Shown here in pieces: positions 10,034 through 57,318 of a DNA stretch of 64,000 bases. Location: positions 62,001 through 126,000 of the IMG/VR virus record IMGVR_UViG_3300027759_004177; one strand, given 5' to 3'. The translations under genes were made by a program, and so were the position numbers. Numbering within the stretch: the stretch's first letter is position 1; every line of letters begins with the position of its first letter. A model generated the notes under the pieces. That model was not told the origin of the DNA. It did not search any database and was given only the letters and a program-made list of their open reading frames with translations.

Positions 10034-10034
10034 G

Positions 10035-10350: not shown

Positions 10351-10369
10351 TATCGTTATTATATACTTA

Positions 10370-38709: not shown

Positions 38710-38759
38710 ATACTTGTACATTAAGAACAGCTAAAGCTGTCGTGTATCAAGGAGCTAGT

Positions 38760-39041
38760 ATGAATGAAGCATTTAAGATCATCGGAGATCTAGGTTTTCC
38801 GATTGCTGCCGCACTCGCTGGTGGTTACTTTGTATATCTCACAATCAAACTGTTATTAGCTGGAGTATTGTCCGCTATCAAAGGCATGGCCGGCATTATC
38901 ACAGCCTTAGACAATCGTGTAAAAACTATGAATCACGATGTTATCCGCATTGATACCATTGTTAGTAATGCACTAGGTCTCAAACCTGATACTGATCGTA
39001 TTGCCCGTGCAGACGGCAAGAACGATGCAAGGAGAGACTAA
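38760..39041 (+). CDS. small membrane protein (GFPI family, holin-like)
   Basis: GFPIAAA TM then coiled coil; paralog of 39341. Confidence 0.7.
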   Translation: MNEAFKIIGDLGFPIAAALAGGYFVYLTIKLLLAGVLSAIKGMAGIITALDNRVKTMNHDVIRIDTIVSNALGLKPDTDRIARADGKNDARRD

Positions 39042-39235
39042 TGAGATACTACGACTACGAATGGGACCTGGAGCCCAATAGAATCCTGTTAGACGCTGAA
39101 CTCAATGTAGATGCATTAGGCTGGCGCGGCGGCGACTATTTTAAAGTTATTAATCATAATGGTCGTGTTATGTTGGTCAAAGTTGACCCGCTGGAAAAAT
39201 TTCTAAGAGACGGAGTTGGCGATGAAAAAATATGA
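39041..39235 (+). CDS. hypothetical protein
   Basis: stop/start overlap in operon. Confidence 0.65.
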   Translation: MRYYDYEWDLEPNRILLDAELNVDALGWRGGDYFKVINHNGRVMLVKVDPLEKFLRDGVGDEKI

Positions 39236-39338
39236 TCCTTATGCATTACCACTTAAACAGATTTGGACCGATGGTGATCTAGCCAAGTTTGCACTTATCG
39301 CATTTATAGCAGGTGTAATTACAGGGATATTATTTTAA
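39222..39338 (+). CDS. 38-aa membrane peptide
   Basis: GGAG SD; C-terminal hydrophobic helix. Confidence 0.55.
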   Translation: MKKYDPYALPLKQIWTDGDLAKFALIAFIAGVITGILF

Positions 39339-39340
39339 TC

Positions 39341-39661
39341 ATGGACATTGTAAATTTAATAAACAAATATGGCTTTCCCATTGTGATGGCAGTGGGCATG
39401 GGCTACATCATCAAGTATGTGTGGGAATGGGCCACAAAAGAAGTCAAGCCTGTTATTTCGGATGCCAATACAGTTCTTATTGCTCTTATCGATCGCATCC
39501 GTATGCTAGACAATGACTTGATTCGTTTGAATCAAAAAGTCAATACTGTGTTACATCTACGCGGTAAGACCATTGAGTATGAACGTGTAGAAGCAGAAAA
39601 AGCCATCAATAAAATAGAAAAAACAGTCAACGACAAAGAAGCCACCGGCGGTAACGGATAA
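39341..39661 (+). CDS. small membrane protein (GFPI family, holin-like)
   Basis: YGFPIVMA; LIDRIRMLDNDLIR resembles LDNRVKTMNHDVIR of 38760. Confidence 0.7.
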   Translation: MDIVNLINKYGFPIVMAVGMGYIIKYVWEWATKEVKPVISDANTVLIALIDRIRMLDNDLIRLNQKVNTVLHLRGKTIEYERVEAEKAINKIEKTVNDKEATGGNG

Positions 39662-40391: not shown

Positions 40392-40406
40392 AATCTTCCT
40401 TAAAAG

Positions 40407-40499
40407 TTATGGTCTCACCTCTTTGTCTATGCGCCGGATATTGTATATCGTGTTGACGACACTTAGAACCAGCACCTGCTGGTTGGTTACTCCCCACAT
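40407..40499 (-). ncRNA. yybP-ykoY (Mn2+) riboswitch
   Basis: GGGGAGUA...CGUCAAC...CGGCG...GGUGAGACCAU directly 5' of the terC-family gene. Confidence 0.85.
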
Positions 40500-40537
40500 G
40501 TATTTATATACAAATTTTCATTTACAATAAATATTAG

Positions 40538-42513: not shown

Positions 42514-44565
42514 TTATTTCTCATGAGCTATGAATTCCCCATTCCAGTTTGCTGGTAGGTCTTGTTGCTTCATAAAGTCGCAACGTTCAATCCATATCTT
42601 ATAGTACTTGTCCATTTGTCCACCAAAGTTGCCTGTTAACTTTTTGCACATGGCGGCCGCTTCATTGAATTTTTTCTGACGGTACAGGTCATGCATTACA
42701 TCGTGTGCTTCCTTGTCTTTGCTGTAATCTTCACCTCGAGTACGTAATACTGTATAGATTAAGTCTGCTACTGTCTTGCCTTTTGGTTGTAAGTTATCCA
42801 ACAGCAAGTAGAAGAAATCATCTTTAGTTCTGTTGTATGTTTCAGCACCGATAATGGCCAACACACCGTAAGCCTTACAACGTGCTTCTAGTCGGGCGGC
42901 TGTACTAACCATGTCACCCAAGATATCATAACTGTGTCGGTCGGTTGAACCCATCTCACCAATGAACCCAACACCTGTGTTACAGCCCCAGCCCATTGCA
43001 GCTGGCGGCAAGCCTTGTGCTTCCATTTCTTTGGTATAAGCATCTACAGCGTCTAACATTTCTAAACCTACTTTGACAATAGTTCTAGCATGATCAGGAT
43101 CGTCTATAGGCGCACCATGAATGTGCATACTTGCATCACCCACATACTTGATAACCATACCCCGGTTGTCCATGATAGGTTTTGAAATAGCATCCATGTA
43201 ACCGTTCATGTATTTGCCTAATCCGCCTACATCATCGCCATAGTGTTCGCCAATTGGTGTAAAGCCACGTAAGTCACTAAACATAACACTTACGTCTTTA
43301 CGCACACCACGTTTGATCAAGTCAGGATCTTTCTGTAACATCTCCACAACTTCTTTTGAACAGTAACCAGCAAACTGTTTCTTTATGGCTTGCTTTTGTA
43401 AGAACTCGCTTACAAACTTAACACCGTAAGCATGAAGGAGAATAACAGTGAGGCCGCCAGCAAGGGCAGTAATGTCAAATAGCCAAGCATTAGCCGTGTA
43501 AACGTACTGAGATACAGGATACAAAATACCAAGAGCGATAACACCAGTAGCAAGTCCAACATATACATACCTCGTTAAAAATAATAATACGATACCTAAA
43601 ACCACAATAGCAATGATCTCAGCACCATCGGCCCAGTCGGGTCTTGATATTGCTGGACGATCTTTGTTGGCAATAACTGTGCCTAATACTGCGGCCTGTA
43701 AATCTTGTGGTAACATTTCGCCCAGGCTTGTGGCTACAGGGTTTGCTAGACCTTGCGCCGACACACCAACAATAACGATTTCACCATCAAAGTCTCGGGG
43801 CAAGTTGGTTAGGCTATAACGCTCTGGTGTCAAGCTCCAGTCAATCCATATACGACTCAAGCTGTCTGTGGTCACAGGACCAAATGCTGGAATTCGCATT
43901 TTCTCAACACCCTGCTCATTGATTTTAACTTGGAAGGTTGAGTCGCCTGCAGCCACACGCATGACTTCCATGGCCAGGCTTGGATACAATCGACCGTTGT
44001 AAGCAACTACCAGTGGCATACGACGCACAACACCGTCAACTTCCGGAAACGTGTTAACAACACCAACTCCGGCAGCGGCCGTTTCTACACTGGGAATGTT
44101 AGCGATAAGCCCCGGATAGGTCACAAACGCATCTAAACCAAATGGTCCAATTACTGCTGATCCTGGAGCTCGTGGTTGATTTCTTGTCGTTGTTGATCCA
44201 ATGCTAGGAAGTACCGTTGGGTATTGTTTTAACGCTTGCACATACGCAGTATCTTGCCCCATACGGTCTTTATCTGGAGTAAGAATATTAAACACAACAA
44301 GACCAGCATTACGTCTGTAAAGGTCTCGAATAATGGCACCGTATGTATCACGGGAAAAAGGAAATTGCCCATATCGTTCTAATGCTTTCTCATCTATGTT
44401 TACTACACTGACCCCGATCGTTTCGGCAGGTCGGCTAGTAACAAGTGTATCGAAATAGCGTAGCCTTACGCTTTCAACAAACATAGGATCTGCAACACGC
44501 AAGCCCACAATGATTGCTAGTGTTAATAGAGCAGTCCAAGGACTGATTAAGATTTTTTTGAACAT
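42514..44565 (-). CDS. CHASE2-domain class III adenylate/guanylate cyclase
   Basis: DGVVRRMPL (CHASE2), 3 TM, FSDLRGFT, KYVGD, GDMVSTAARLE. Confidence 0.93.
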   Translation of the reverse strand: MFKKILISPWTALLTLAIIVGLRVADPMFVESVRLRYFDTLVTSRPAETIGVSVVNIDEKALERYGQFPFSRDTYGAIIRDLYRRNAGLVVFNILTPDKDRMGQDTAYVQALKQYPTVLPSIGSTTTRNQPRAPGSAVIGPFGLDAFVTYPGLIANIPSVETAAAGVGVVNTFPEVDGVVRRMPLVVAYNGRLYPSLAMEVMRVAAGDSTFQVKINEQGVEKMRIPAFGPVTTDSLSRIWIDWSLTPERYSLTNLPRDFDGEIVIVGVSAQGLANPVATSLGEMLPQDLQAAVLGTVIANKDRPAISRPDWADGAEIIAIVVLGIVLLFLTRYVYVGLATGVIALGILYPVSQYVYTANAWLFDITALAGGLTVILLHAYGVKFVSEFLQKQAIKKQFAGYCSKEVVEMLQKDPDLIKRGVRKDVSVMFSDLRGFTPIGEHYGDDVGGLGKYMNGYMDAISKPIMDNRGMVIKYVGDASMHIHGAPIDDPDHARTIVKVGLEMLDAVDAYTKEMEAQGLPPAAMGWGCNTGVGFIGEMGSTDRHSYDILGDMVSTAARLEARCKAYGVLAIIGAETYNRTKDDFFYLLLDNLQPKGKTVADLIYTVLRTRGEDYSKDKEAHDVMHDLYRQKKFNEAAAMCKKLTGNFGGQMDKYYKIWIERCDFMKQQDLPANWNGEFIAHEK

Positions 44566-44575
44566 CAAGTATTTA

Positions 44576-45571
44576 TTACTTGATCACTGCTAGATTGTCT
44601 TTGAAAATACGCCAGCATTCATCCCAGGTCCAACGTTGACTGGACTGTTTAACCACGCGACCGCTTAGTTTTAAACACTTTTCAACTGCTACCGCTAGGT
44701 CGTTGTCCATATAGCCGTTTATGCCATTTTCAATGATGTCTACGGGACCTTGTACAGGAAAGGCTGCTACAGGAGTACCTTGTGCCATGGCTTCAATCAT
44801 CACTAGACCAAAGGTGTCTGCTCGGCTGGGAAACACAAACACATCAGCTTGATTGTAATAATCAACCAGCTCCTGTCCTTGTTTGTAGCCCACAAACTTA
44901 GCAGAAGGTAGCAACCGACGTGCTTCAGACATGTACGGTCCGTCGCCTACTATAACTAGTGTGTACGCATCTTGTAAAGGAATTAAATCTATCAGACCTT
45001 TTTCAGCACTGACCCGACCCACATTGAGAACCATTGGCTTAGAACGATCATCACACCATTCCGCTGTGGGCTTGATATCTCTGCGTACACCCCGAGTCCA
45101 GATAACCATGCGTCCAAATCCGTGTGATTTTAAATCCGCTTCTATGGTCTTTGTTGTGACCAGCACACGATGACTGTTTTTGTGGAACCAACGCAAATAC
45201 CAGTAAGTTAAACTTTTAGGCACATGATACATTGTTTTTAAGAACTTGGGAAAGTCTGTGTGATAGCTGGTATTGTAAGGAATACTGTTACGTTCACACC
45301 ACCAACGAGCAAAAAAGCCTACAGGCCCTTCTGTAGCGATGTGTATATAATCTGGCTGTATCGCTTTAATTTTCTTACTGATACCGTGCGGCCAGCACAA
45401 GCGAACTTCAGGATAACCAGGGCAAGCAAAATTAGGGAACTGCCCGGGATCAAGATAAACAACACTATACCCGTCACGCCTAGCATGATCTTCCAAGTTT
45501 TTGAAAGTTGTGACCACGCCGTTGATTTGATCTGGGACATTGTCTGTTATGATCAAGATTGTTTTTGACAT
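44576..45571 (-). CDS. GT4 glycosyltransferase (Agt-like DAG glycosyltransferase)
   Basis: QINGVV, HIATEGP.G, SYHT.FP, VGRVSAEK, DTFGLVMIEAMA.GTPV. Confidence 0.85.
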   Translation of the reverse strand: MSKTILIITDNVPDQINGVVTTFKNLEDHARRDGYSVVYLDPGQFPNFACPGYPEVRLCWPHGISKKIKAIQPDYIHIATEGPVGFFARWWCERNSIPYNTSYHTDFPKFLKTMYHVPKSLTYWYLRWFHKNSHRVLVTTKTIEADLKSHGFGRMVIWTRGVRRDIKPTAEWCDDRSKPMVLNVGRVSAEKGLIDLIPLQDAYTLVIVGDGPYMSEARRLLPSAKFVGYKQGQELVDYYNQADVFVFPSRADTFGLVMIEAMAQGTPVAAFPVQGPVDIIENGINGYMDNDLAVAVEKCLKLSGRVVKQSSQRWTWDECWRIFKDNLAVIK

Positions 45572-45726
45572 CGTGTACTTATTTTAAAATTATCAAATTT
45601 AAGCCAATATTGTACGGTGCTTTGAGCTCGCAAACATTCGGATTCGGTAGCAAATTCGATCGTTATTCGTCCTGGTATGTCTTGCGGATTATTCGTGTGA
45701 ACTGCCAGTAGTATCAGTATCCACAT
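45553..45726 (-). CDS. 57-aa secreted hypothetical protein
   Basis: MWILILLAV...EF....EC...C pattern. Confidence 0.5.
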   Translation of the reverse strand: MWILILLAVHTNNPQDIPGRITIEFATESECLRAQSTVQYWLKFDNFKISTRCQKQS

Positions 45727-46480
45727 TGTCATGTGCCTTTGTCCAAGTTACTATTTCCCACCTACCCGAGTGATGCTCAACCAGAGCAGTCATTGATTCG
45801 ACCCAGTCGCCATCATTCATATACACAATGCCATCTATCATCTTTATTTCTGCGTGATGTATGTGTCCACAGATCACACCATCAAAGCCACGTTTCTTAC
45901 AATATGTAGCTAGATTGGTTTCAAACTGAAACATAAAGTCTGCGGCTTTTTTGACACGGTGTTTGAGATACTTGCTTAAACTCCAGTAGCCAAATCCCAA
46001 CTTGTGTCTGATCCAATTAAATCTGCTGTTCCAATCTAATACCAGGTCGTACAGTTTATCGCCCAGGAAACTCAGCCAAGGGGCCAAACGTGTGATTCCA
46101 TCAAACAGGTCTCCGTGGGTGACCAAATATGTTTTGCCATCCGCCCCAATGTGTTCTGTTTGATTTGTTATTTCAACACGTCCAAATCCCATGCCATAAG
46201 GTATGAGTGGTCTCAGAAACTCGTCGTGGTTGCCGGCCACATAGATCACACGTGTGCCACGTTTGGCGTGTCCTAGGATTCTTCTGATTGCATTGGTGTG
46301 GCTTTGTTTCCATCGCCACTTGTTTTGTTGAATCTTCCAGGCGTCAATGATGTCGCCCACTAGATAAAGTGTTTCACAGGTGTTGTGTTTGAGAAAGTTG
46401 TTGAGTTGTTCGGCTTTGCAATCTCTGGTGCCAAAGTGTATGTCACTAATAAAAATTGAGCGATAAGTTTTGGCTGTCAT
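45689..46480 (-). CDS. LpxH-like metallophosphoesterase (UDP-2,3-diacylglucosamine hydrolase family; PlcP-like)
   Basis: YRSIFISDIH.G, LVGDIID, GNHDEFLR, HGDLFD, CGHIH, N.GDWVES. Confidence 0.88.
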   Translation of the reverse strand: MTAKTYRSIFISDIHFGTRDCKAEQLNNFLKHNTCETLYLVGDIIDAWKIQQNKWRWKQSHTNAIRRILGHAKRGTRVIYVAGNHDEFLRPLIPYGMGFGRVEITNQTEHIGADGKTYLVTHGDLFDGITRLAPWLSFLGDKLYDLVLDWNSRFNWIRHKLGFGYWSLSKYLKHRVKKAADFMFQFETNLATYCKKRGFDGVICGHIHHAEIKMIDGIVYMNDGDWVESMTALVEHHSGRWEIVTWTKAHDNVDTDTTGSSHE

Positions 46481-46502
46481 AACCATATTTATCGCTCAAT
46501 GT

Positions 46503-46603: not shown

Positions 46604-48637
46604 TTAAAAACTAAAACGAGCCTCTATCATAGCACTTTGTACTATGTAATCATATTGTTTGCCATAACCATAACGTAGGCGCACAACACTCTTTGGATCA
46701 ATTGCATATCCAACACTGGCGTAGGCTGTGTTAAAGTTTTGACTGTTGTAAGCATACTCACCTGTTACACGCCAGTCTGTAGCAACCGTGGCGTCATAAC
46801 GTACACCAATGTCTGTGCTGGTCTTGTTTGTGTTGACTGCGTCATATGTCATAGCAGTTAAACTACTACCAGATTCTGCGACCCCGTTGCGACGATTGGT
46901 TTCGTTACGCACACCAACAAAGGGACGTATGTCATTCCACTCTGGTGTGTAAACACGAGCAGTTGCCCACAAGTCTTGACCTTTGGTTGAACTTGTATTT
47001 GCCATGCCCAGTTCAGGTAAACTGTGATTGGTATCAAATGTGTTGGCAGCATAACCAATGTCGTTTTTAAAGATCCAGTCATTGACTGTGTAAGCACTAT
47101 AAATGCCTACGTGGTCTTTGTTTAAACTACCACCTGCATTTGTGCCTGCGGCACCATTTAGGTTAGCCTGACCACGATTGTATTGACCGCCAATGATCCA
47201 GTTTGGAGCAACTTGCCAGTCGTAACCCAGGCCGTATGTCATGCTCTTGTACGAGTAACCACCCACAGAGTTTGATTGGCCGGCGCTGCCTGTCACATAA
47301 AAGGTGTTGCGTTCTGATACATTGAAGTCACCACCCAGCACACGATTGCGATCTAACACATTGCTGTCTAACATGTAGTTCATTGCCTGATTGACATTGC
47401 TCAACTGACTGTATTGATCCACGCGAGTTGAATAGTCATTGGTTTGAATTGCCTGACTGATTTCATTGCCCGATGCACTATTAGAACTGACTGAGTCGGT
47501 TGTGCTCACGGTAACTACAGGAGTTCCATTTGTCACTGTTTGAGTGCCATCGCTGTAAGTTGTGGTAGTCACAGGAGTTGTGGTTGTTGTGACAGTCACA
47601 GGAGTTGTGGTTGTTTGTGTAACTGTAAATGGTGTTGTTACAGTGGTTGTTTTTGTTTGTGTAACTGTCAATGTCTTGGCAGTTTGAGCACCTCTTGCGT
47701 TGTCAATGGCCAAGGCCGCTGCCGCTGTACCGTAAGCAATACTGTTGGTAACTGCGGCGGTCCCGGTTGTGGTTGTTGTGGTAACCGAGTCGACTGTTGT
47801 TGTGCCGGTCACTGTTGGGGCCGAAGGTGGAGGAGTTGGATCTACTGAGGGTGCAACACTACCTGGGTTAGGTGCCACAGCACCAAATGTCTCGCCATTT
47901 TTTGTTACTGTGCCGATTGCATCATTGACCTGTAGCACCGGACTCAGTGCAGTATCACCCTGATTGAATACACCAAAGCCCACTTTGTATGTGCCTGCTG
48001 TTAAAATGTCAAACTGTGCCAACTGCCAACCTGTTGAGCCATAACTGCCAGTTGAGTAGTTGCCTGTGTTGGGGTTGGTAGCACCCAGTAGGGCGTACTG
48101 TCCCAGTACGTTATTGACCTTACCGAATGTGTCGGCTGATCCTGTGTTGACCAAAGTGGCAATACTGCCATCGTTAAACGGCACATAGTCTGTGCTGGTA
48201 TATACCCAGGCCATTTTAAATGTGGCTGGTGCTGTGAATGTGAAATCTTTACTGATCCAAGCAGAACTGGTGATGCCGCCGCCCTGTGACGCTACCAAAG
48301 AATTTAAACTACTAATACTTGAACTGCTCAAACCCAATGCGGTAGTCATTGCAGAATAGTTTTGTTGGCCGCCCGGTTGCATGCCAACCATGTAACTGCC
48401 TGTGTATGGATTGATATTCCATGTGTTAGGACCACAGCAACTAATAGTTTGTGTTCCACTGGTAGTGCTCACACCAATACCGCTTTGCATGTATGGGCCT
48501 GTTTGTGTGCCTGTTCCGCCACCTGCGGTCCAACCGTTGAGGTTGCCGGTGCCAAAACTGTAATCTTGTGTTTGTGCCTGTGCTGAAAAAGCCAGGCATG
48601 CTGCAAAAGCCGCTAGGGCTGTTGTGAAAAACTTCAT
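46604..48637 (-). CDS. autotransporter-like outer membrane protein
   Basis: signal peptide, beta-rich passenger, Pro/Thr-rich stalk, C-terminal barrel ending ARFSF. Confidence 0.75.
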   Translation of the reverse strand: MKFFTTALAAFAACLAFSAQAQTQDYSFGTGNLNGWTAGGGTGTQTGPYMQSGIGVSTTSGTQTISCCGPNTWNINPYTGSYMVGMQPGGQQNYSAMTTALGLSSSSISSLNSLVASQGGGITSSAWISKDFTFTAPATFKMAWVYTSTDYVPFNDGSIATLVNTGSADTFGKVNNVLGQYALLGATNPNTGNYSTGSYGSTGWQLAQFDILTAGTYKVGFGVFNQGDTALSPVLQVNDAIGTVTKNGETFGAVAPNPGSVAPSVDPTPPPSAPTVTGTTTVDSVTTTTTTGTAAVTNSIAYGTAAAALAIDNARGAQTAKTLTVTQTKTTTVTTPFTVTQTTTTPVTVTTTTTPVTTTTYSDGTQTVTNGTPVVTVSTTDSVSSNSASGNEISQAIQTNDYSTRVDQYSQLSNVNQAMNYMLDSNVLDRNRVLGGDFNVSERNTFYVTGSAGQSNSVGGYSYKSMTYGLGYDWQVAPNWIIGGQYNRGQANLNGAAGTNAGGSLNKDHVGIYSAYTVNDWIFKNDIGYAANTFDTNHSLPELGMANTSSTKGQDLWATARVYTPEWNDIRPFVGVRNETNRRNGVAESGSSLTAMTYDAVNTNKTSTDIGVRYDATVATDWRVTGEYAYNSQNFNTAYASVGYAIDPKSVVRLRYGYGKQYDYIVQSAMIEARFSF

Positions 48638-48729: not shown

Positions 48730-48888
48730 TTATTTATTGGGTTTTTGTTCTCGGTTTTGTGGTATTAGATCGGCCCAGTGTCGATAACAGGTCTTGAGAT
48801 ATTGAGTGTTATCGCCTACCTTGCTGTAGACTTGTGCGCCGTGTTCACAACCTGGTACCTGGCATACTGGTGGGATTCCTGTGATCAT
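48730..48888 (-). CDS. 52-aa possible zinc-binding protein
   Basis: CQVPGC...CYRH; GGAGG SD. Confidence 0.5.
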   Translation of the reverse strand: MITGIPPVCQVPGCEHGAQVYSKVGDNTQYLKTCYRHWADLIPQNREQKPNK

Positions 48889-49076
48889 ATGTAGACTACC
48901 TCCCGTAAAAATGGATATTTCATAACAACAAAATCTCTGTATTCTTCGGGTACAAAAAATTCAACCACGTAACCGCGATGCGTTTCAAAATATCCGCCTG
49001 CCTGTTGAACGTACAGGCTCACATCATCCAACACGTTTCTACCGTGATGAAAATATCTTGCTGTAAATGATATCAT
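48885..49076 (-). CDS. hypothetical protein
   Basis: GGAG SD, operon position. Confidence 0.65.
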   Translation of the reverse strand: MISFTARYFHHGRNVLDDVSLYVQQAGGYFETHRGYVVEFFVPEEYRDFVVMKYPFLREVVYI

Positions 49077-49088: not shown

Positions 49089-50531
49089 TTATTGTCTTAC
49101 GGTTATTACCCCGCATCCGCCGGCTGTCACACAGGTTGTTGTTATGTTATATACTGCTCCACCCGATTGTATCAGATCTACTGACCCCGGACCGCCTGAG
49201 TTGTTGATTGTGATTGAAGCACGATTAGCCGTGGCTCCTTCTTGTACTGCTGTTATGGTATTGCCATTGCCAGTTAGAGTACTTTCCAGATAGTGTTGTC
49301 CGCCATCTTTTTGTACAACCGACACAGTATTGTTGTTGCCTGTGACTGTGTTGAACAAGGTTTTGTTGGCATTATTGGTCTGCGTGGCATTTACTGTGTT
49401 GGTATTACCGTTGATAGTGGTTTCCATATAGTGTCCACCCACACCGCCAGTGTTGTTTTGTTGCGTGGTCACAGAATTGTAATAACCAGTAACATCCACA
49501 CGCTGATAGTGATTGTTAGAACTGTTGGTTGATGTTCCTGTGGCAGTTACACTTTGATTCAAATTTAAAACGTTGTTGCCGCCTACCACACGCATTTCTA
49601 TTGTGTTTTTACCTGCGGTATCTAGGTCGCCTTGGCGTACAGTAATGCTATTACTACTGCCTTGTATCTGTACAGCCTGTTGCCCTATGCCCTTGAGTTC
49701 GTTGGCACGACCTGATTGCGTGACATTAACGGTATTGTTATCACCCACTTGATCTATGTATATGGTGTTGTTGACCACGCTTTTGGTTTGAAACGCTGTA
49801 ACTCTGGACTGTTGTTCGGTTGTAATATTGGCTGTGTATGTGGGTGCTGGAGGTGGCGCACTATATCCTCCAGCGGATCCACTGGTAGAACCGCCTGTGA
49901 CCGAGTAGTTACCGCCATTGACTGGTGCTCCGTTGTTTATAACGCAGGTTTGTGTTCCGCTGTATAGGGCACAACTTTGCCAGCCATTGCTACTGGTCCA
50001 GCCTTGAGCATAGCCGTTGGTTCCGTACACACCAAATCCTGGGTTATATAAAATGTTAGGGCCGCCGTTAAAACTCAAACTTGGGTCGATAATATACGGT
50101 CCATAGTTGCCGGCCCAGTAGCCGCCGTCTTTGCCATAGAACTCTACCTTAACATACGCAACTGAGGCACAGCTTCCACCACAGTTGGTAGTTGTTAGTG
50201 TATATGTTGTGGGGGCGGTAGCTCCGTAGACCAAGGTGTTGGCCTGCTGTACTGTGTTAACGATTTGGTTGCTGCTATTATAAAAAACCAGTCTTATGGT
50301 AAACGGATCGCCCGGAGCACGACCACCACCATCCATTGCCTGCACAGAAAGAGTTAGTGTTCCGCCGGTCTGCATGGCACTATCGAAAACCACAGTCTGA
50401 CTGACTGTTGCAAAGTTGTAGCCCATCTTAAGGGCATTAGACGTTGTTTGTGCTTTTACCAAACCCAAACAGGACAGCTCTAACAAGGCCACAGCAAAAA
50501 TTATCAACAGGTATGTAAACAATCTTTTCAT
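49089..50531 (-). CDS. secreted FBA-like lectin plus curlin-repeat protein (CsgB-like)
   Basis: FYGKDGGYWAGNYGP; NTIYIDQVGDNN and repeated QxGxxN. Confidence 0.7.
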   Translation of the reverse strand: MKRLFTYLLIIFAVALLELSCLGLVKAQTTSNALKMGYNFATVSQTVVFDSAMQTGGTLTLSVQAMDGGGRAPGDPFTIRLVFYNSSNQIVNTVQQANTLVYGATAPTTYTLTTTNCGGSCASVAYVKVEFYGKDGGYWAGNYGPYIIDPSLSFNGGPNILYNPGFGVYGTNGYAQGWTSSNGWQSCALYSGTQTCVINNGAPVNGGNYSVTGGSTSGSAGGYSAPPPAPTYTANITTEQQSRVTAFQTKSVVNNTIYIDQVGDNNTVNVTQSGRANELKGIGQQAVQIQGSSNSITVRQGDLDTAGKNTIEMRVVGGNNVLNLNQSVTATGTSTNSSNNHYQRVDVTGYYNSVTTQQNNTGGVGGHYMETTINGNTNTVNATQTNNANKTLFNTVTGNNNTVSVVQKDGGQHYLESTLTGNGNTITAVQEGATANRASITINNSGGPGSVDLIQSGGAVYNITTTCVTAGGCGVITVRQ

Positions 50532-51649
50532 TAGTTCTGCCTTAGTGTTATTGTAGTTCCACCGCCTGAGTTTACACGATTTTTAATTTCTATACTGCCT
50601 TGTATCTGATAAATTGTGGTGTTTTGATTTTTAGGCACAGTCACACTTTGTACATTGCTTCCATCGTCTCTGGTCAAGTTCACTGAGTAGTCATCCACTG
50701 ATGCTACAACACCCGTGGTGGCCACATAGTCCGGTAACAATCCACTTTTAGCTGTGTTTAAAAAATCCAATTGAGCAGCCATCTGTGCGTTGATGATATC
50801 TAAGATATTGGCTAAGAGATTCTGATCTAGCAAACTGGTACTAAGAAAATCTTTAAAATGTGTTTCTTGGGCTGTCAACATGTTGACCAAGCCATTTTCA
50901 CGTAAAAAATCTACATCCAAGGCTCCTTTAGCAACGGCTCGTTGTGTAGTTTGAACTTCATTGAGTTCTTTGGGCGGTGCCACAATCAACATGTTGTTGA
51001 TGGCATCAGGGGAGAGATTGACTATGACCGGACGTGTGGGGAAACTTGAGCGTGTTTCTATCTTGGTGGCTTGAAATGGTTTATTTAATATTACACTACC
51101 AGCATCGTTGCTGACTGATATTTCTCCAGTTTTACAATCACGTTCCACATTGACCCAACCACGTGGACAACTGGGCAACAAGATTATAGTTGATGCACCC
51201 AGCTCGTCTACTGTAGCAGTAAAGTCTGTACCGCGTACACCAACAGTAGCGGTAGGAGTATTAAGGGCAACATTTTGAGGACTGTTTTTAGCGATCTGTC
51301 CTGACGCATATCTCACTGTTCCTGCGGCCACATTGACTGCTAACTTGCCGCCTTTGGTTGACTTGGGATCGTATACAAAATCGTCAATGACCAACCTGCT
51401 GTTTTCATTGACCTGTACTTTGGTATCATCGGCAAAAGTTATGCCAACTTTACCCGCTGTGGTTTTTACCGCGTCCTGCATCTCCACTCGAGTTCCCTTG
51501 GTCCCAGTGAGCGTCGTCTTCTGTCGTTGTATCGAAGGCGGGCTGTTCACTTGCTCCGTTATGGTACCAATCGCGGCTTCTAAGTTCATGGATGTACTCA
51601 GCAAGAGTACGCATAGTGTCAGGTTGCATAATTTGTTCCCCTTATACAT
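50531..51649 (-). CDS. FecR-domain secreted protein
   Basis: F.DDT...ENS.L.ID.FVYDP, TPTATVGVRGTDF. Confidence 0.85.
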   Translation of the reverse strand: MYKGNKLCNLTLCVLLLSTSMNLEAAIGTITEQVNSPPSIQRQKTTLTGTKGTRVEMQDAVKTTAGKVGITFADDTKVQVNENSRLVIDDFVYDPKSTKGGKLAVNVAAGTVRYASGQIAKNSPQNVALNTPTATVGVRGTDFTATVDELGASTIILLPSCPRGWVNVERDCKTGEISVSNDAGSVILNKPFQATKIETRSSFPTRPVIVNLSPDAINNMLIVAPPKELNEVQTTQRAVAKGALDVDFLRENGLVNMLTAQETHFKDFLSTSLLDQNLLANILDIINAQMAAQLDFLNTAKSGLLPDYVATTGVVASVDDYSVNLTRDDGSNVQSVTVPKNQNTTIYQIQGSIEIKNRVNSGGGTTITLRQN

Positions 51650-51659
51650 TTATAATCGC

Positions 51660-52451
51660 TTATCTAGCAGTTTGGTTTATAGTTACGCTATTTCCATTTC
51701 CACTGCTACTGGTAAAATTAAACACATTAGCCGCAACACCACCAGACTGTGTCACAGTAAAAGTATTACTACTACCAGTCTGTGTTATACTTGCGGTATG
51801 TCCGCCATCAGCTTGACTTACAGTAAATGAGTTACTGGCCCCCACGGCTGTGATTGTGGCGCTGTTACTGTTACCAGTTTGTGTAACTGTAGCATTATTG
51901 CCACCGCCACCAGTTAGGCTGATGTTTTGTGTATTGGTGTTGCCTTCAACAACGCCAGTAAATGTATTGTTGGCACCACCTGCGGTATTTACAGTTACAC
52001 TATTATCATCGCCCTTGATGTTAAGATTGGCAGTGGCATTATTACCTGACTGTGTGATATTCACAGTATTTCCCGATGCTGTACTGTCATTGGCATTATT
52101 TAAATTAATAATACCTGCGGCGTTGTTACCCGTGACACTATAATTTACCGTGTTACCAGTGGTTCCTGTGCCTGTGCCACGATTGATTCCTAAACTCAAG
52201 GTATTACTACTACCAACCTGATTCACCGTCACTTCGTTACCGTCACCATAGATGCCGGATGGGGTAGTGTTGCTGGTTCCTGTGCCTTGTATGCCGCGTA
52301 CCACGTTGCCTGTTCCGTCTTGTGTAATAGAAATGGTGGCGTTGTCACCTGTTTGATCAATGTAGATACTGTTATCCACAGCATGCACACTCACACTCAT
52401 CACAATACCTAGCAGGATTGTTGTTACTTTTGTCGCTAGTTTGTGTTTCAT
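51660..52451 (-). CDS. curlin-repeat protein (CsgA/CsgB-like)
   Basis: signal peptide; many ~22-aa (I/V)xQxGxxNxA repeats, rich in Gly/Asn/Thr. Confidence 0.8.
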   Translation of the reverse strand: MKHKLATKVTTILLGIVMSVSVHAVDNSIYIDQTGDNATISITQDGTGNVVRGIQGTGTSNTTPSGIYGDGNEVTVNQVGSSNTLSLGINRGTGTGTTGNTVNYSVTGNNAAGIINLNNANDSTASGNTVNITQSGNNATANLNIKGDDNSVTVNTAGGANNTFTGVVEGNTNTQNISLTGGGGNNATVTQTGNSNSATITAVGASNSFTVSQADGGHTASITQTGSSNTFTVTQSGGVAANVFNFTSSSGNGNSVTINQTAR

Positions 52452-52472
52452 AATACTTCTTCCTTTTTGACC

Positions 52473-53807
52473 TTATTTGGTCTCTACTTTACCACTCTTG
52501 ACCTTTTGTTCGTTGACCCCAACAACCAACGGTGTTGCTGATACTACTTTTTGTAAAACATAACCACCCCTACCTTGATGATCCTTAACCCGTAGCCACT
52601 CACCTTCGATAGCAACTACTGTTAATTCTGTACCACGAAGAAATTGCCAAGTTCTTTGGCTGGTTTCTCGTGTTTCTTTATAAATGTATTCTGTTTCTCG
52701 TAACCAAACTCGATTGGCCACTGGTTCTTTTGTTTTTACTTCGGACTGTACTCGTTTCACGCTGTCAGCTAGATTTTCCCCAGGACGGCGTTCCAGACTG
52801 GTAGGAGCTGGTGCTGGTTTTGCTTCCGGTTGTGACGTTACAGGGGCTTGGACTGGTGCTTTGGTTTCTGTGACTGCGACTGGCCCTGGCTCTGGTTTTT
52901 TGGCTGGTTGTTCTGCGACTGGCGTAGGCGGTGTAACTGTTGTAACAGGTTTGACATCATTTCGTGTTTCCTCTCGCTTAAAGCTCCAAACGCCTTTGCG
53001 TTCACCTTCTTTGATCAATTCAACCACGGCAGCTTCCACTGTGGCTTTGACTGCCAAAGTGCCAGGCTCGTTAATTGTTAATCCAGTTTCAAATTCAAAC
53101 ATACTGGCAGTCGGGCTAAGTGCGTTGCTGGCACTACCAAAAACTTGACTAGCAATATTTTTATTTTCAATAAACTTTAGCACAGCCACACTATCTGATG
53201 TGCTGTAAACTATCTTGGTCACACTCACGGCGGCCAAGACCTTGCCGGTGTTCACACTCACGGCTCGTAGACTAATAGTTACAGTATCTTTGCTATACTG
53301 TGTCTGTGGGCCAATGCCCAAAAATCTATAAGCGGCACCACCAGACTCTGAGCTGGAGTCATAGCCAATGATACCACCTTCCATGATGATGCCGGCAAAT
53401 TGTAGGGGCATCAAGGGCTTGGCACCAGGTCCCTCGTAAGCTTCACGCATTTGTCGTATGATGGTACGTTCTTTGGTCAAGCTATCTATGCCCACACGTT
53501 CTACTACATCAAACCACTCACCACGACCCACGTCTTGTAAGGCCTTGATCAGGAACACTTCGGCACCTTGGGTCACTGCCGAGCTCAAGCTGGCTATGCC
53601 CGGGGTAGGTTTACGCTGACCAGTTTTATCAGCAAAACTGTAAACTGCCGCTGTGACTTTCTTGCCATTGGGTGGTGGTAATGTATCAAACTCTTTCTGC
53701 ATTTTGTTGGGCGTGGGTTCAGGACGATATTCAGTGATGCTAGTTTTTTGCGTGGCAGCACAACCAGTTAAGATAGCGACAAAGAGTAAGGTGAATAATG
53801 TACGCAT
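52473..53807 (-). CDS. csgG: curli secretion channel CsgG with C-terminal SH3-like domain
   Basis: lipobox LTGC; AVYSF.DKTGQRKP, S.AVTQGA, FDVVER, EGGIIGYD. Confidence 0.9.
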   Translation of the reverse strand: MRTLFTLLFVAILTGCAATQKTSITEYRPEPTPNKMQKEFDTLPPPNGKKVTAAVYSFADKTGQRKPTPGIASLSSAVTQGAEVFLIKALQDVGRGEWFDVVERVGIDSLTKERTIIRQMREAYEGPGAKPLMPLQFAGIIMEGGIIGYDSSSESGGAAYRFLGIGPQTQYSKDTVTISLRAVSVNTGKVLAAVSVTKIVYSTSDSVAVLKFIENKNIASQVFGSASNALSPTASMFEFETGLTINEPGTLAVKATVEAAVVELIKEGERKGVWSFKREETRNDVKPVTTVTPPTPVAEQPAKKPEPGPVAVTETKAPVQAPVTSQPEAKPAPAPTSLERRPGENLADSVKRVQSEVKTKEPVANRVWLRETEYIYKETRETSQRTWQFLRGTELTVVAIEGEWLRVKDHQGRGGYVLQKVVSATPLVVGVNEQKVKSGKVETK

Positions 53808-54287
53808 TTAACTTCCAAACTGAAATGTACCCAGCGGTACTGTAATTGTGGTTTGGTTGCCCACTGTGTCTGTGACCTGCAGATAAATGTTGCTACTGTC
53901 TTTGCTCCAGAAAATAGTATTGCCCTCAAAGTTCAAAGTACCTGAACAACCCACGCTGTTGCTGCCACTACAGTTGTTGTTGGCAAACATGGCAGTGGCC
54001 AAGTTTTGACTGATCTGAGCGTAGATACGCGACTCTAAGTTGTTTAAAAACTTTTGTATGTTGGTATTTTGTTTATCGGCTTTGGCCTTGTCAATGGCTG
54101 CTTGGATGTCTTTGGCCACCTGTGCTCTGCGTGAAAACTCTTGATTTTCGATAGTAAGGACGTGACTACTGTAACCTGAACCATTGAAACTTGGGCTTTT
54201 AAAACTGTAATCATTGAAAGGGGCGCCGTAGATAGTGGTCGACCACACAGCGATTAAGGTTAGAATAACCTGGTTAAACATACGCAT
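53808..54287 (-). CDS. csgF: curli assembly protein CsgF
   Basis: FKSPSFNG..Y, F..NLESRIYAQIS, QTTITVP; directly upstream of csgG. Confidence 0.75.
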   Translation of the reverse strand: MRMFNQVILTLIAVWSTTIYGAPFNDYSFKSPSFNGSGYSSHVLTIENQEFSRRAQVAKDIQAAIDKAKADKQNTNIQKFLNNLESRIYAQISQNLATAMFANNNCSGSNSVGCSGTLNFEGNTIFWSKDSSNIYLQVTDTVGNQTTITVPLGTFQFGS

Positions 54288-54391
54288 ACTGCTACCTCTT
54301 TTTATTATTATTATCGGTAGTAGAATCGTCAAGACTCTAGCTCCTATTAGTATTTAACAGGATCTAGCACAAATTAAGTGGTGGTTTTAAT

Positions 54392-55578: not shown

Positions 55579-55884
55579 TTACAGGGATGAAATTTTATCT
55601 AGTATGGCTTGATAAAAGCTATCCAGTTCGCCAGCAAAAGCGCCAACAAGATTTGGTGCCAGGTCCTGACATAGTTGATAATTTTTGTTGTTGAATGCTG
55701 TTATAAATGCCTGGTGTAATTCTTTAAGATTTTCTAGACGTGCGATATCGGGAAATACTCGTTCAGCTGGCACCACACAATATGCTGTGATGGTTTGATC
55801 TCCAACTGGAAATGTTTCTAATTCTAGCACAGTTTGATTGGTGCGTAAACTTTCTGCTGCCGCTCGATTCCAAATGATTTGCAT
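55579..55884 (-). CDS. hypothetical protein resembling the cyclase C-terminal helical domain
   Basis: YQLCQDLAPNLVGAFAGELDSFYQ vs FNEAAAMCKKLTGNFGGQMDKYYK. Confidence 0.65.
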   Translation of the reverse strand: MQIIWNRAAAESLRTNQTVLELETFPVGDQTITAYCVVPAERVFPDIARLENLKELHQAFITAFNNKNYQLCQDLAPNLVGAFAGELDSFYQAILDKISSL

Positions 55885-56441
55885 TATGCTTGTTCCATTG
55901 CTCGTGCGTAGGTACGCTTTTCTAGTTTCAATGAGTGGTATATTGCTTGCACACCCTGTGCTTGGCTGACGCAATCTTCTAAGGCATTGTGTAGGCCTGT
56001 TTTGCCTTTTTCTCTAGGATCACCGTGTACTTGAAACAAGGTACGGCTATCACGTATTTGCCAGAACTGCCAAGGAGTGGGCCAACCCATCTGACGGTAA
56101 ATGTTTTCTAGGATAACAATGTCAAACGCAGGGCCTTGACACCAGATGGCATCAACACCAACTGTAAATTTATTTAATTGTCGATACATTGATTCCAGGC
56201 TAACACGGTTGCCTTCGCCCAAGGCTTCCTCGCGGACGTCTTCTGCTTGATTTGACCACCAGGCCAGTGTATCTTGTTGCACTTCTCGACCCAGGGCAAG
56301 CTGTTCATCCACGTCTATGCGTAAGTATAGGCTGTCGCTAAAACTATCGGGAGTGTAAGGATCGAACTTGACAGCACCCAGGGTGAGAATAGCACAGTCT
56401 GGGCGTGTTCCTAGTGATTCCAAATCTAACATTATGTCCAT
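55884..56441 (-). CDS. DEDDh 3'-5' exonuclease (exo VIII/DexA-like)
   Basis: MLDLESLG, W.QGPAFD, RDSRT, HNALED. Confidence 0.88.
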   Translation of the reverse strand: MDIMLDLESLGTRPDCAILTLGAVKFDPYTPDSFSDSLYLRIDVDEQLALGREVQQDTLAWWSNQAEDVREEALGEGNRVSLESMYRQLNKFTVGVDAIWCQGPAFDIVILENIYRQMGWPTPWQFWQIRDSRTLFQVHGDPREKGKTGLHNALEDCVSQAQGVQAIYHSLKLEKRTYARAMEQA

Positions 56442-56447
56442 GTTAGT

Positions 56448-56476
56448 ATTATACTACATTAAGATTTTTTTGTCAA
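56448..56476 (-). promoter_or_regulatory. sigma70 promoter (leaderless)
   Basis: TTGACA-17bp-TATAAT, 6 nt before ATG. Confidence 0.75.
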
Positions 56477-57264: not shown

Positions 57265-57318
57265 GATATTTTAATAAGGGGAATAAGTTGCCTTCCCCTT
57301 ATTATACACACCTATTAC

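What the first reader, a model, noticed from the sequence alone, without database searches (positions are those of the whole stretch)
49089..54287. Curli-type secretion locus including amyloid subunit genes
Seen: csgF, csgG, a curlin-repeat protein, a FecR protein and a second curlin-repeat protein in one operon, all with export signals. No CsgE, CsgC or CsgD was recognised. Known: csgF/csgG have been reported in some aquatic phages. Inference: with the subunit genes present, the infected cell could display phage-encoded amyloid fibres for aggregation, shielding or superinfection exclusion.
Basis: partly seen in the sequence, partly recalled or inferred. Interest (0 to 1): 0.72.

Follow-up and report, generated by a model that had tools for sequence, protein, structure and literature searches.

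The report
Phage curli secretion module, freshwater jumbo
A 357-kb freshwater phage carries a curli (type VIII) secretion operon with its own fibre-subunit genes, an extra sensor protein and a signalling enzyme; the same module is already published for marine phages, so this is a new, somewhat elaborated member of a known kind.

Summary
On the minus strand, 49089-54287 holds a tightly packed operon: csgF, csgG, a curlin-repeat protein (cur1), a secreted FecR-domain protein and a second curlin-repeat protein (cur2). All begin with Sec or lipoprotein signals. CsgE and CsgC are absent from the whole 357-kb phage genome.

The same gene order, followed by a CHASE2 nucleotide cyclase (here at 42514-44568), is annotated in Pelagibacter phage HTVC008M and Methylophilales phage Melnitz. 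A 2022 paper (PMC9599517) described it, curlin subunits, FecR and cyclase included. That paper also proposed aggregation, superinfection exclusion and import as roles.

What this window adds:
- The module also sits in freshwater T4-like phages, some of them very large. It is conserved and under purifying selection.
- This CsgG carries a proline-rich linker and an SH3b-like domain.
- cur2 combines a swappable lectin-like head (PA14, discoidin or an unassigned beta-sandwich) with a conserved curlin anchor. Its allele has been exchanged by recombination.
- FecR plus CHASE2 is a stand-alone bacterial sensor pair, not an iron regulator.
- Two small membrane proteins always travel with the module.

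Fibre formation itself remains untested. Verdict: new member of a known kind, moderate to low interest.

The parts
53808..54287 (-). csgF: exported CsgF-family protein. The likely start is the ATG at 54287, preceded by an AGAGGA Shine-Dalgarno-like motif; the ORF stays open up to a TTG at 54332.
   Evidence: Pfam PF10614, E 4.8e-10; phrog_35372, E 1e-63. The mature N-terminal motif F-x-F-K-S-P-S-F-N-G-x-G-Y is conserved across 19 relatives (F30, P33, F35, G37 and G39 invariant; K31 and Y40 nearly so). It aligns with the E. coli CsgF N-terminus F-Q-F-R-N-P-N-F-G-G, which is the segment that inserts into the CsgG barrel (E 0.03).
52473..53807 (-). csgG: outer-membrane lipoprotein pore (residues 1-285), followed by a Pro/Ala/Lys-rich linker (about residues 286-370) and an SH3b-like domain (about residues 371-430, nt 52518-52697).
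   Evidence: PF03783, E 8.7e-42, with weak SH3_4 (4.5e-5) and SH3_3 (1.6e-3) hits; NCBIfam CsgG, 2.5e-44; PDB 6lqh and 3x2r, E 7e-42. The lipobox LTGC is at residues 13-16. The constriction-loop residues aligned to E. coli Y51, N55 and F56 are T, S and L, with a one-residue insertion; the loop is conserved across the viral family with L or F at the last position. The linker plus SH3b extension occurs in a subset of relatives.
51660..52451 (-). cur1: exported curlin-repeat protein of 263 aa, the candidate major fibre subunit.
   Evidence: PF07012, E 1e-16, three stretches. NCBIfam CsgB (1.9e-10) and CsgA (6.3e-10) both match, but far below their equivalog cut-offs. The sequence has a 22-23 residue periodicity and is 50% N+G+T with no Cys. 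It is conserved in the same position in nearly all of the 33 viral loci.
50531..51649 (-). Secreted FecR-domain protein of 372 aa: signal peptide, FecR domain (about residues 25-225, with an invariant Cys161/Cys172 pair), a variable helical linker, and a conserved C-terminal strand region ending in ...ITLRQN.
   Evidence: PF04773, E 1.8e-9; phrog_37870, E 1.7e-145. The model is confident for residues 26-220 and matches anti-sigma periplasmic domains 4m0h and 6ovk. It falls in a 100/99-supported viral clade together with HTVC008M and Melnitz.
49089..50531 (-). cur2: exported two-part protein of 480 aa. It has a beta-sandwich lectin-like head (about residues 43-154), a low-complexity linker, and a C-terminal curlin-repeat region (about residues 250-480) with an invariant terminal Cys pair.
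   Evidence: PF07012, E 2.7e-4. The AlphaFold model shows a regular strand-turn-strand stack over residues 255-480, with most 10-residue blocks at pLDDT 70-90. The head matches sugar-binding domains (Fbs1 SBD, CBM4/16, BC2L-C) at E about 3e-4 and TM about 0.45-0.5. Orthologues carry PA14 heads (L030, L032, HTVC008M) or an F5/8 type C head (L020) on the same curlin region. Against L005, dS is 0.41, compared with 0.10 or less in neighbouring genes, and dN/dS is 0.14.
48730..49076 (-). Two small ORFs (63 and 52 aa) directly downstream of cur2; function unknown.
   Evidence: They are conserved at 40-100% identity in close relatives L005, L007, L009, L010 and L013. No credible Pfam match.
46604..48637 (-). 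Type Va autotransporter (677 aa) with an N-terminal beta-rich passenger, a Thr-rich linker and a C-terminal barrel. It occupies the variable slot of the module.
   Evidence: PF03797, E 2e-14. A weak match to a PEP-CTERM-associated N-terminal family. Relatives L038 and L039 carry a 938-aa autotransporter at the same place. No sequence similarity to the cur2 head.
44576..46486 (-). An LpxH-like metallophosphoesterase (45689-46486) and a GT4 glycosyltransferase (44576-45571), which are inserted cargo in the variable slot.
   Evidence: Pfam Metallophos and Glycos_transf_1. The LpxH equivalog match is only 43.6 bits against a cut-off of 134. The pair is also found together in alphaproteobacterial MAG locus L123; L052 shows the GT4 next to a fragment of the phosphoesterase at the locus edge.
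42514..44568 (-). CHASE2 / class III nucleotide cyclase (684 aa): an N-terminal TM helix, a periplasmic CHASE2 domain, three TM helices and a cytoplasmic cyclase domain. It is a conserved end of the module.
   Evidence: PF05226, E 2.7e-38, and PF00211, E 3e-14; phrog_35576, E 7.7e-184. PDB cyclases match from 1e-20. The metal-binding Asp residues, the Lys and the Arg are present, and the transition-state Asn is aligned with Ser. Present in 20 or more of the viral loci.
38742..39661 (+). Two paralogous small single-pass membrane proteins (99 aa at 38742-39041; 106 aa at 39341-39661). They accompany the module in every relative examined.
   Evidence: Orthologues lie directly upstream of csgF in Melnitz, HTVC008M and L046-L049, and next to the cyclase or GT4 in L020, L024, L030, L038, L050 and L052. 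The alignment shows a shared G-F-P-I...G-Y TM motif and an A-L-D-N-R...D coiled region. No Pfam match at E up to 1.

Best explanation
This is a phage-borne, CsgE-less type VIII (curli) secretion and assembly module. It belongs to the same viral lineage as the module described in marine pelagiphages.

Shown here:
- The phage encodes a CsgG-family lipoprotein pore.
- It encodes a CsgF with the pore-inserting N-terminal motif.
- It encodes two Sec-exported curlin-repeat proteins.
- It encodes a secreted FecR-domain protein.
- It encodes a membrane CHASE2 nucleotide cyclase.
- These genes are co-linear, co-inherited and under purifying selection.

Inferred mechanism:
1. During infection the proteins cross the inner membrane through the host Sec system.
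2. CsgG forms an outer-membrane channel. In this phage it is tied to peptidoglycan through its linker and SH3b domain. CsgF caps it on the outside.
3. Unfolded cur1 passes through the channel and polymerises as a beta-solenoid amyloid fibre.
4. cur2 joins the fibre through its curlin region and displays an exchangeable sugar-binding head. The infected cell thereby gains an adhesive or shielding coat.
5. The FecR-domain protein works in the periplasm with the CHASE2 domain of the cyclase, as such pairs appear to do in bacteria. It converts an envelope or external cue into a cyclic nucleotide signal that acts on host receptors, since the phage has no cNMP-binding protein.

The biological payoff is not resolved. 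Candidates are aggregation with neighbouring host cells, blocking other phages, and attachment to particles.

My confidence by step: about 0.95 that this is a member of the published viral T8SS module; about 0.55 that extracellular fibres are really made; about 0.4 that cur2 is a fibre-borne lectin; about 0.5 that FecR and CHASE2 act as a pair.
For: - Family assignments.
- The same order csgF-csgG-curlin-FecR-curlin-cyclase is annotated in Melnitz and HTVC008M. It recurs in 33 IMG/VR loci, several on contigs of 104-328 kb.
- The FecR tree puts all viral copies in one clade at 100/99 support, with alphaproteobacterial sisters.
- dN/dS is 0.04-0.46 for every gene against L005.
- The CsgF pore-binding motif is conserved across relatives, with five invariant positions. 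The CsgG lipobox and constriction loop are conserved.
- The cur2 model shows a regular strand-turn-strand stack and a lectin-like head. Heads are swapped among orthologues: PA14, F5/8 type C.
- FecR homologues sit beside CHASE2 proteins, with no csg genes, in 28 bacterial loci from several phyla. A LysM-FecR plus CHASE2-kinase operon in Burkholderia is linked to biofilm (PMC5192318).
- Short contigs with 100% identity to fecR and csgF occur in a freshwater metatranscriptome run.
- Published precedent: PMC9599517.
Against: - No experiment shows fibres for any phage curli module. The Melnitz authors saw no clumping of infected cells (PMC9004378).
- CsgE and CsgC are absent, and no distinct CsgB-type nucleator can be named.
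- cur2 and FecR carry conserved Cys pairs. If these are oxidised in the periplasm, they could hinder passage through a roughly 1-nm CsgG constriction.
- The constriction residues differ from those of E. coli.
- The cyclase has Ser in place of the transition-state Asn, so its activity is uncertain.
- The RNA evidence is a handful of contigs and could be carried-over DNA.
- The host is unknown, so I cannot say whether it lacks curli genes of its own.
Confidence: 0.6

Rival explanations
1. The CsgG-CsgF pair has been repurposed as an outer-membrane channel rather than a fibre exporter. It might time lysis, depolarise or permeabilise the envelope, or import large nutrients. In this view the repeat proteins are accessory or periplasmic.
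For: - There is no CsgE gate, so the pore would be ungated.
- The constriction loop is altered and one residue longer.
- This reading is proposed for Melnitz and the pelagimyophages (PMC9004378; PMC7029224).
- No clumping of infected cells was seen.
Against: - Curlin-repeat genes are retained next to csgG in nearly every locus, under purifying selection. A channel alone does not explain that.
- CsgF keeps the motif that positions it on the pore for fibre nucleation.
- The lectin-headed cur2 makes most sense outside the cell.
Confidence: 0.15
2. The core of the module is the FecR / CHASE2-cyclase sensor, which reprogrammes host cyclic-nucleotide signalling. The curli parts serve it, for example by exporting or presenting the FecR-domain protein or a ligand, rather than building a functional coat.
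For: - FecR and CHASE2 are linked in many bacteria without curli genes. They are the best-conserved pair at the two ends of the viral module.
- The FecR C-terminus weakly resembles the last curlin strand of cur2 (P 0.013).
- The two small membrane proteins stay linked to the module.
Against: - The cyclase has a substituted catalytic Asn.
- No phage cNMP receptor exists.
- Podovirus versions often lack the cyclase (PMC9599517).
- The complex prediction gave no verdict and so adds nothing.
- The C-terminal resemblance is too weak to carry weight.
Confidence: 0.15
3. The locus is bacterial DNA wrongly joined to a phage contig, or a decaying relic without function.
For: Related contigs turn up in MAG bins assigned to five phyla.
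Against: - Those MAG contigs carry other genes of this phage type and cluster inside the viral clade, so they are mis-binned phage.
- The locus is flanked by phage genes on a 357-kb record rated complete.
- All reading frames are intact, with dN/dS well below 1.
- The region assembles independently in freshwater runs from at least nine studies.
Confidence: 0.02

Closest known systems
Viral T8SS (curli) module of marine pelagiphages: HTVC008M-type myoviruses, HTVC023P-type podoviruses, and Methylophilales phage Melnitz (PMC7029224, PMC9004378, PMC9599517)
   Same: - The gene order csgF-csgG-curlin-FecR-curlin-cyclase is the same.
- CsgE, CsgC and CsgD are lacking in both.
- The FecR copies fall in one viral clade.
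- The two small membrane genes are shared.
- HTVC008M's second curlin also has a PA14 head.
   Different: - The habitat is freshwater, the genome is 357 kb at 43% GC, and the host is unknown.
- CsgG carries a linker plus an SH3b-like domain.
- The head of cur2 is a different beta-sandwich.
- An autotransporter, a phosphoesterase and a glycosyltransferase are inserted between cur2 and the cyclase.
- The small membrane genes are displaced about 3 kb beyond the cyclase, on the other strand.
- Protein identity to the marine versions is only 29-47%.
E. coli / Salmonella curli system (csgBAC-csgDEFG)
   Same: - A CsgG lipoprotein pore; the match to the solved E. coli CsgG has E 7e-42.
- A CsgF with the F-x-F-x-x-P-x-F-x-G N-terminal motif.
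- Exported subunits built of roughly 22-residue N/Q/G-laddered repeats.
   Different: - There is no CsgE, CsgC or CsgD.
- Subunits are longer, at about 10 repeats, and one has a globular head.
- The constriction residues are T/S/L instead of Y/N/F.
- A FecR-domain protein and a cyclase are embedded in the operon.
- It is encoded by a virus.
Bacterial FecR-domain periplasmic protein plus CHASE2 sensor pairs (for example the Burkholderia LysM-FecR / CHASE2 histidine kinase 'BiofilmReg' operon, PMC5192318)
   Same: A secreted FecR-domain protein is encoded beside a membrane protein with a periplasmic CHASE2 domain.
   Different: - In the phage the pair is split by the variable slot and welded to a curli operon.
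- The output is a class III cyclase rather than a kinase.
- There is no LysM domain.
FecR anti-sigma factors of FecIRA-type cell-surface signalling
   Same: They share the PF04773 domain and its fold.
   Different: - There is no cytoplasmic anti-sigma domain and no membrane anchor, only a cleavable signal peptide.
- No ECF sigma factor or TonB-dependent receptor lies nearby.
- Calling it an iron regulator is therefore not justified.

Membership tests
Curli / type VIII secretion system | A CsgG-family outer-membrane lipoprotein channel | tested here: met
   PF03783, E 8.7e-42. PDB E. coli CsgG, E 7e-42 over residues 1-285. Lipobox LTGC.
Curli / type VIII secretion system | A CsgF with an N-terminal peptide that inserts into the CsgG barrel | tested here: met
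   PF10614, 40.1 bits against a cut-off of 25.8. The N-terminal motif is conserved across 19 relatives and aligns to the E. coli CsgF N-terminus at E 0.03. Binding itself was not tested.
Curli / type VIII secretion system | Sec-exported subunit(s) made of tandem curlin repeats that fold as a beta-solenoid | tested here: met
   cur1: PF07012, 61 bits against 20.7. cur2: 21.2 bits. Period of 22-23 residues. The cur2 model shows a strand-turn-strand stack over 255-480. cur1 itself was not modelled.
Curli / type VIII secretion system | A separate nucleator subunit (CsgB) | tested here: inconclusive
   cur1 scores about equally, and far below cut-off, against the CsgB and CsgA equivalog models. cur2 or the FecR protein could nucleate, but nothing shows it.
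Curli / type VIII secretion system | The periplasmic gate and specificity factor CsgE | tested here: not met
   No PF10627 match at E up to 1 in the whole 356,865-bp genome. The same lack is reported for alphaproteobacterial and pelagiphage systems.
Curli / type VIII secretion system | The periplasmic anti-amyloid chaperone CsgC or CsgH | tested here: not met
   For PF10610 there is only a 13.5-bit match containing an internal stop. No CsgH-specific model was run.
Curli / type VIII secretion system | Extracellular amyloid fibres (Congo red or ThT binding, visible by EM) | not testable with these tools
   This needs expression and microscopy.
Viral T8SS-FecR-cyclase module of pelagiphages (PMC9599517) | The gene order csgF, csgG, curlin, FecR, optional second curlin, adenylate cyclase | tested here: met
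   compared with Melnitz and HTVC008M.
Viral T8SS-FecR-cyclase module of pelagiphages (PMC9599517) | Common descent of the viral copies | tested here: met
   The FecR-domain tree places the window inside a clade of 32 viral or mis-binned rows that includes HTVC008M and Melnitz, at support 100/99. Only FecR was treed.
Viral T8SS-FecR-cyclase module of pelagiphages (PMC9599517) | One or two small 'histidine kinase' genes preceding csgF | tested here: inconclusive
   Orthologues of the two small genes that precede csgF in Melnitz and HTVC008M exist at 38742-39661, but they are displaced. They have no kinase domain and no invariant His. I could not confirm that they are what the paper calls HK.
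FecR-type anti-sigma regulator | An N-terminal cytoplasmic anti-sigma domain and a transmembrane helix, with a partner ECF sigma factor and TonB-dependent transducer | tested here: not met
   The protein has only a signal peptide followed by PF04773. Its neighbours are csg genes and a cyclase.
CHASE2-linked class III nucleotide cyclase | A periplasmic CHASE2 domain between TM helices, plus a catalytically complete cyclase domain | tested here: inconclusive
   Both domains are present, and the topology was read from the sequence. The metal-binding Asp pair, the Lys and the Arg are present, but the transition-state Asn aligns with Ser.

The most novel reading that the evidence does not exclude
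The module may be a phage-encoded adhesin display system. In this reading a conserved curlin 'anchor' lets interchangeable lectin heads (PA14, discoidin, other beta-sandwiches) be mounted on an amyloid fibre. Alleles are shuffled between co-circulating phages much like tail-fibre tips. The secreted FecR-domain protein, whose C-terminal strand resembles the last curlin strand, would dock on the fibre or pore and report its state to the CHASE2 cyclase. The phage would then sense what its infected cell is stuck to, or how much fibre has been made, and retune the host through a cyclic nucleotide.
Probability: 0.15. Interest if true: 0.65.

Novelty: new member of a known kind. Interest (0 to 1): 0.33.

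Why it matters
Phage-encoded curli would give a virus a way to change how its host cell sticks, clumps or is seen by other phages. In open water that could alter infection dynamics and particle formation.

This has already been argued for marine SAR11 and OM43 phages. This window shows that the same module is widespread in freshwater and in much larger T4-like phages, so it is not a peculiarity of streamlined marine hosts.

It also points to testable details that the published descriptions do not cover:
- a peptidoglycan-tethered CsgG;
- a lectin-headed curlin whose head is swapped and whose allele recombines;
- FecR/CHASE2 as an imported bacterial sensor pair rather than an iron regulator.

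None of this changes the category of the finding.

Tried and rejected
- **Megablast against GenBank phages.** A search with the 7.9-kb region found nothing. Only protein-level searches reach the relatives.
- **Complex prediction.** I tested the CHASE2 periplasmic domain against the FecR domain. Score 0.00, no verdict, so it is not used as evidence either way.
- **FecR C-terminus against cur2 repeats.** A profile-profile comparison gave only a 13-column match at P 0.013. I keep it as a weak lead only.
- **Foldseek on the cur2 model.** Hits were dominated by the head domain. No CsgA-like solenoid appeared in the top lists, so the solenoid claim rests on the model's secondary-structure pattern and on Pfam.
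- **cur2 head against the autotransporter passenger.** No similarity.
- **Promoter and terminator scans.** There were 44 promoter-like sites against 30.3 +/- 6.3 in shuffles, and 17 terminator-like sites against 14.6. This is too close to background to define transcription units. A 10-of-12 match at 54332-54304 just upstream of csgF is noted only as a consensus hit.
- **CsgC.** The only match (13.5 bits, with an internal stop) is rejected as noise.
- **Other whole-genome searches.** No psbA and no cNMP-binding domain.
- **RNA evidence.** Six short contigs of one metatranscriptome run were laid on the operon; three of them, in fecR and csgF, are identical to the window. DNA carry-over cannot be excluded, so I do not claim transcription.
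- **Host identification.** This failed. The two-piece betaproteobacterial-type tmRNA is only a hint.

Full report
**What is there**

The window is bases 62001-126000 of a 356,865-bp IMG/VR virus record rated complete, at 42.7% GC. Its genes include a DNA ligase, radical-SAM enzymes and virion proteins closest (about 45% identity) to T4-like cyanophages. It has no psbA.

On the minus strand, 49089-54287 holds five abutting genes:
- csgF: PF10614, E 4.8e-10.
- csgG: PF03783, E 8.7e-42.
- A 263-aa curlin-repeat protein, cur1: PF07012, E 1e-16.
- A 372-aa FecR-domain protein: PF04773, E 1.8e-9.
- A 480-aa second curlin-repeat protein, cur2: PF07012, E 2.7e-4 (all).

The gaps between them are 0, 21 and 10 nt, and cur2's start overlaps the FecR stop by one base. 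Read by eye, each product starts with an export signal; CsgG has a lipobox. CsgE and CsgC are absent from the whole genome, and cur1 and cur2 are its only curlin genes.

The same strand continues with two small ORFs, a type Va autotransporter, an LpxH-like phosphoesterase, a GT4 glycosyltransferase and a CHASE2 / class III cyclase at 42514-44568.

Comparison shows which of these belong to the module. Phage Melnitz and Pelagibacter phage HTVC008M carry csgF-csgG-curlin-FecR-curlin-cyclase in that order, and their records annotate most of these genes as such. A scan of IMG/VR returned 33 loci with the same core at 40-100% identity, several on contigs of 104-328 kb. The stretch between FecR and the cyclase is a variable slot. 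It holds cur2 in many loci, and the autotransporter, phosphoesterase and glycosyltransferase in some.

Two paralogous small membrane proteins (window 38742-39041 and 39341-39661, plus strand) also accompany the module everywhere. They lie directly upstream of csgF in the marine phages and next to the cyclase in the freshwater ones. They have no Pfam match.

**How common, and where**

The best 120 are 59-99% identical to the window's FecR, and some lie on contigs of 240-352 kb. The DNA of the operon is held by freshwater and lake metagenomes from at least nine studies.

A relative on a 340-kb contig has the same module beside heme oxygenase, a bilin reductase, HSP70, Hsp20 and ClpS.

In a FecR-domain tree all viral copies, freshwater and marine alike, form one clade at 100/99 support on a long stem. 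Its sisters are alphaproteobacterial. Contigs in that clade that are filed under MAGs of five phyla carry other genes of this phage type, so they are mis-binned phage.

**Selection**

Against the near-identical relative L005, every gene has dN/dS of 0.04-0.46. cur2 has dS 0.41 while its neighbours have 0.10 or less. Its allele has therefore been replaced by recombination while staying under purifying selection (dN/dS 0.14). Metagenome contigs show the same diverged patches confined to cur2.

**The parts in detail**

*CsgG.* It aligns to solved E. coli CsgG over residues 1-285. The residues aligned with the E. coli constriction (Y51, N55, F56; that numbering is from my memory of the 2014 structure paper) are T, S and L, with one extra residue. 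The loop is conserved in the viral family, with L or F at the last position. After residue 285 come a Pro/Ala/Lys-rich linker and a roughly 65-residue segment with an SH3b-type pattern and weak SH3_4, SH3_3 and TIGR04211 matches. Only a subset of relatives has this tail. The CsgG C-terminus is periplasmic in the solved structure (established knowledge), so a peptidoglycan tether is the natural inference.

*CsgF.* It keeps an F-x-F-K-S-P-S-F-N-G-x-G-Y motif at its mature N-terminus, conserved across relatives with five invariant positions. The motif aligns with the E. coli segment that sits inside the CsgG barrel.

*cur1.* It is 50% Asn+Gly+Thr, has no Cys, and has a 22-23 residue period. It matches the CsgA and CsgB equivalog models equally weakly.

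*cur2.* The model has a regular strand-turn-strand stack over residues 255-480 and an N-terminal beta-sandwich. That sandwich resembles sugar-binding domains at E about 3e-4 and TM about 0.45-0.5. Orthologues have PA14 or F5/8 type C heads on the same curlin region; HTVC008M gp018, annotated as hypothetical, is one of them.

*The FecR protein.* It consists of a signal peptide, a FecR-fold domain with an invariant Cys pair, a variable helical linker and a conserved C-terminal strand region. It has no anti-sigma domain and no sigma factor or TonB partner nearby.

*The cyclase.* It has the expected topology and most catalytic residues, but Ser aligns where the transition-state Asn is expected.

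**FecR and CHASE2 belong together**

Among 80 bacterial loci fetched with the FecR profile, 28 carry a CHASE2 protein within a few kb and no csg gene. They come from Myxococcota, Planctomycetota, Omnitrophota, Elusimicrobiota and many Alphaproteobacteria, including Pelagibacteraceae single-cell genomes. A Burkholderia operon pairing a periplasmic LysM-FecR protein with a CHASE2 histidine kinase has been tied to biofilm formation (PMC5192318).

The phage module thus looks like a curli operon welded to an imported bacterial envelope-sensor pair. The label 'iron-dependent regulator' used in the literature is not supported by the architecture. A complex prediction for the two periplasmic domains returned no verdict. 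The phage encodes no cNMP-binding protein, so any signal would act on host receptors.

**What is already known**

- PMC7029224 (2020) reported csgF and csgG, with co-occurring genes, in pelagimyophages. It floated 'sibling capture' and noted that the freshwater SAR11 myophages lack the operon.
- PMC9004378 (2022) found the operon in Melnitz, stated that csgA and csgB are lacking, and proposed a lysis-timing pore.
- PMC9599517 (2022) explicitly identified the curlin-repeat proteins, FecR, the cyclase and small 'HK' genes in both podo- and myoviruses. It showed an alphaproteobacterial origin and global marine abundance. It proposed superinfection defence, aggregation, import and recombination as roles.

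I found no paper that places the module in freshwater or jumbo phages, describes the CsgG-SH3 fusion, or describes the modular lectin heads. That literature search covers open-access text only.

**Most likely mechanism and rivals**

The best-supported reading is a working, CsgE-less curli system. It would coat the infected cell with cur1 fibres bearing cur2 lectin heads, and it would be monitored or regulated through FecR/CHASE2 and a cyclic nucleotide.

What is shown: gene content, homology, synteny, common descent and purifying selection. What is inferred: export through CsgG, polymerisation, the location of cur2 and FecR, the FecR-CHASE2 contact, and the benefit to the phage.

The main rivals are a repurposed channel and a signalling-centred module. 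Each explains some genes but not the persistent retention of exported curlin proteins. Contamination or a decaying relic is excluded for practical purposes.

**Verdict**

The locus is real, correctly recognised and biologically attractive, but it is a new member of a published kind of phage module. Its added value lies in the extension to freshwater phages of up to 357 kb and in several architectural details that make the published hypotheses easier to test.

Noticed in passing
window 10012-10400 (-): The phage encodes a two-piece (permuted) tmRNA. It matches the betaproteobacterial model RF01850 at 144.5 bits, and ARAGORN reads the tag peptide as ANDEQFALAA. Melnitz also encodes a two-piece tmRNA. 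This may hint at a betaproteobacterial host.
   Followed up: partly
window 44576-46486 (-): An LpxH-like metallophosphoesterase sits beside a GT4 glycosyltransferase. The phosphoesterase scores far below the LpxH equivalog cut-off. The same pair occurs together in alphaproteobacterial MAG locus L123 (54% and 40% identity); L052 has the GT4 next to a fragment of the phosphoesterase. From memory it resembles the PlcP/Agt phospholipid-to-glycolipid renovation pair of SAR11 and roseobacters. If so, it would be a phosphate-sparing phage gene pair.
   Followed up: partly
window 46604-48637 (-): A phage-encoded type Va autotransporter. It has a beta-rich passenger, a long Thr-rich linker and a C-terminal barrel, and it sits in the variable slot of the curli module. 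Relatives carry a 938-aa version at the same place. It is a second surface-display device next to the curli genes.
   Followed up: partly
window 38742-39041 and 39341-39661 (+): Two paralogous small single-pass membrane proteins stay linked to the curli module in all relatives, although their position changes. They are probably the genes called 'histidine kinase' in PMC9599517, but they have no kinase domain and no invariant His.
   Followed up: partly
window 39702-42328: A TerC-family membrane protein, a fatty-acid desaturase and a radical-SAM enzyme lie between the cyclase and the small membrane-protein pair. These are further envelope- or lipid-related cargo.
   Followed up: no
window 55884-57771 (-): Upstream of the module lie an Rv2179c-like 3'-5' exoribonuclease, a cytidylyltransferase, ClpS and an Hsp20. 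ClpS, Hsp20 and the exoribonuclease recur next to the module in the 340-kb relative L038. That relative also has HSP70, heme oxygenase and a ferredoxin-dependent bilin reductase there, although the window's genome has no psbA.
   Followed up: no
window 53808-54332 (csgF product, residues 56-135): The middle of CsgF gives a weak sequence match to flagellar P-ring protein FlgI chains in the PDB (E 2.8e-4, 80 residues). Unexplained; possibly chance.
   Followed up: no
window 50531-51649 (FecR model): Part of the FecR model matches the 76-residue 'cell surface anchoring domain' 5ix9 (TM 0.77 by target, 27% identity, E 0.02). That entry is, as I recall, the retention module of an RTX ice-binding adhesin. 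This could hint that the FecR-domain protein acts as a plug or anchor. Not pursued.
   Followed up: no
window 49487-49580, 49715-49787, 50513-50586: Metagenome contigs from two freshwater runs are near-identical across csgG, cur1 and fecR. Within cur2 and at its start they carry short patches of the same length but diverged sequence. This indicates allele mosaicism confined to cur2.
   Followed up: partly
L045-L050 (genome contigs): Phage contigs carrying this module are filed in public MAGs labelled actinobacterium, Flavobacteriaceae, Luteolibacter, Rhodobacteraceae and Pirellulales. These are binning contaminants that could mislead host or gene-origin inferences.
   Followed up: partly
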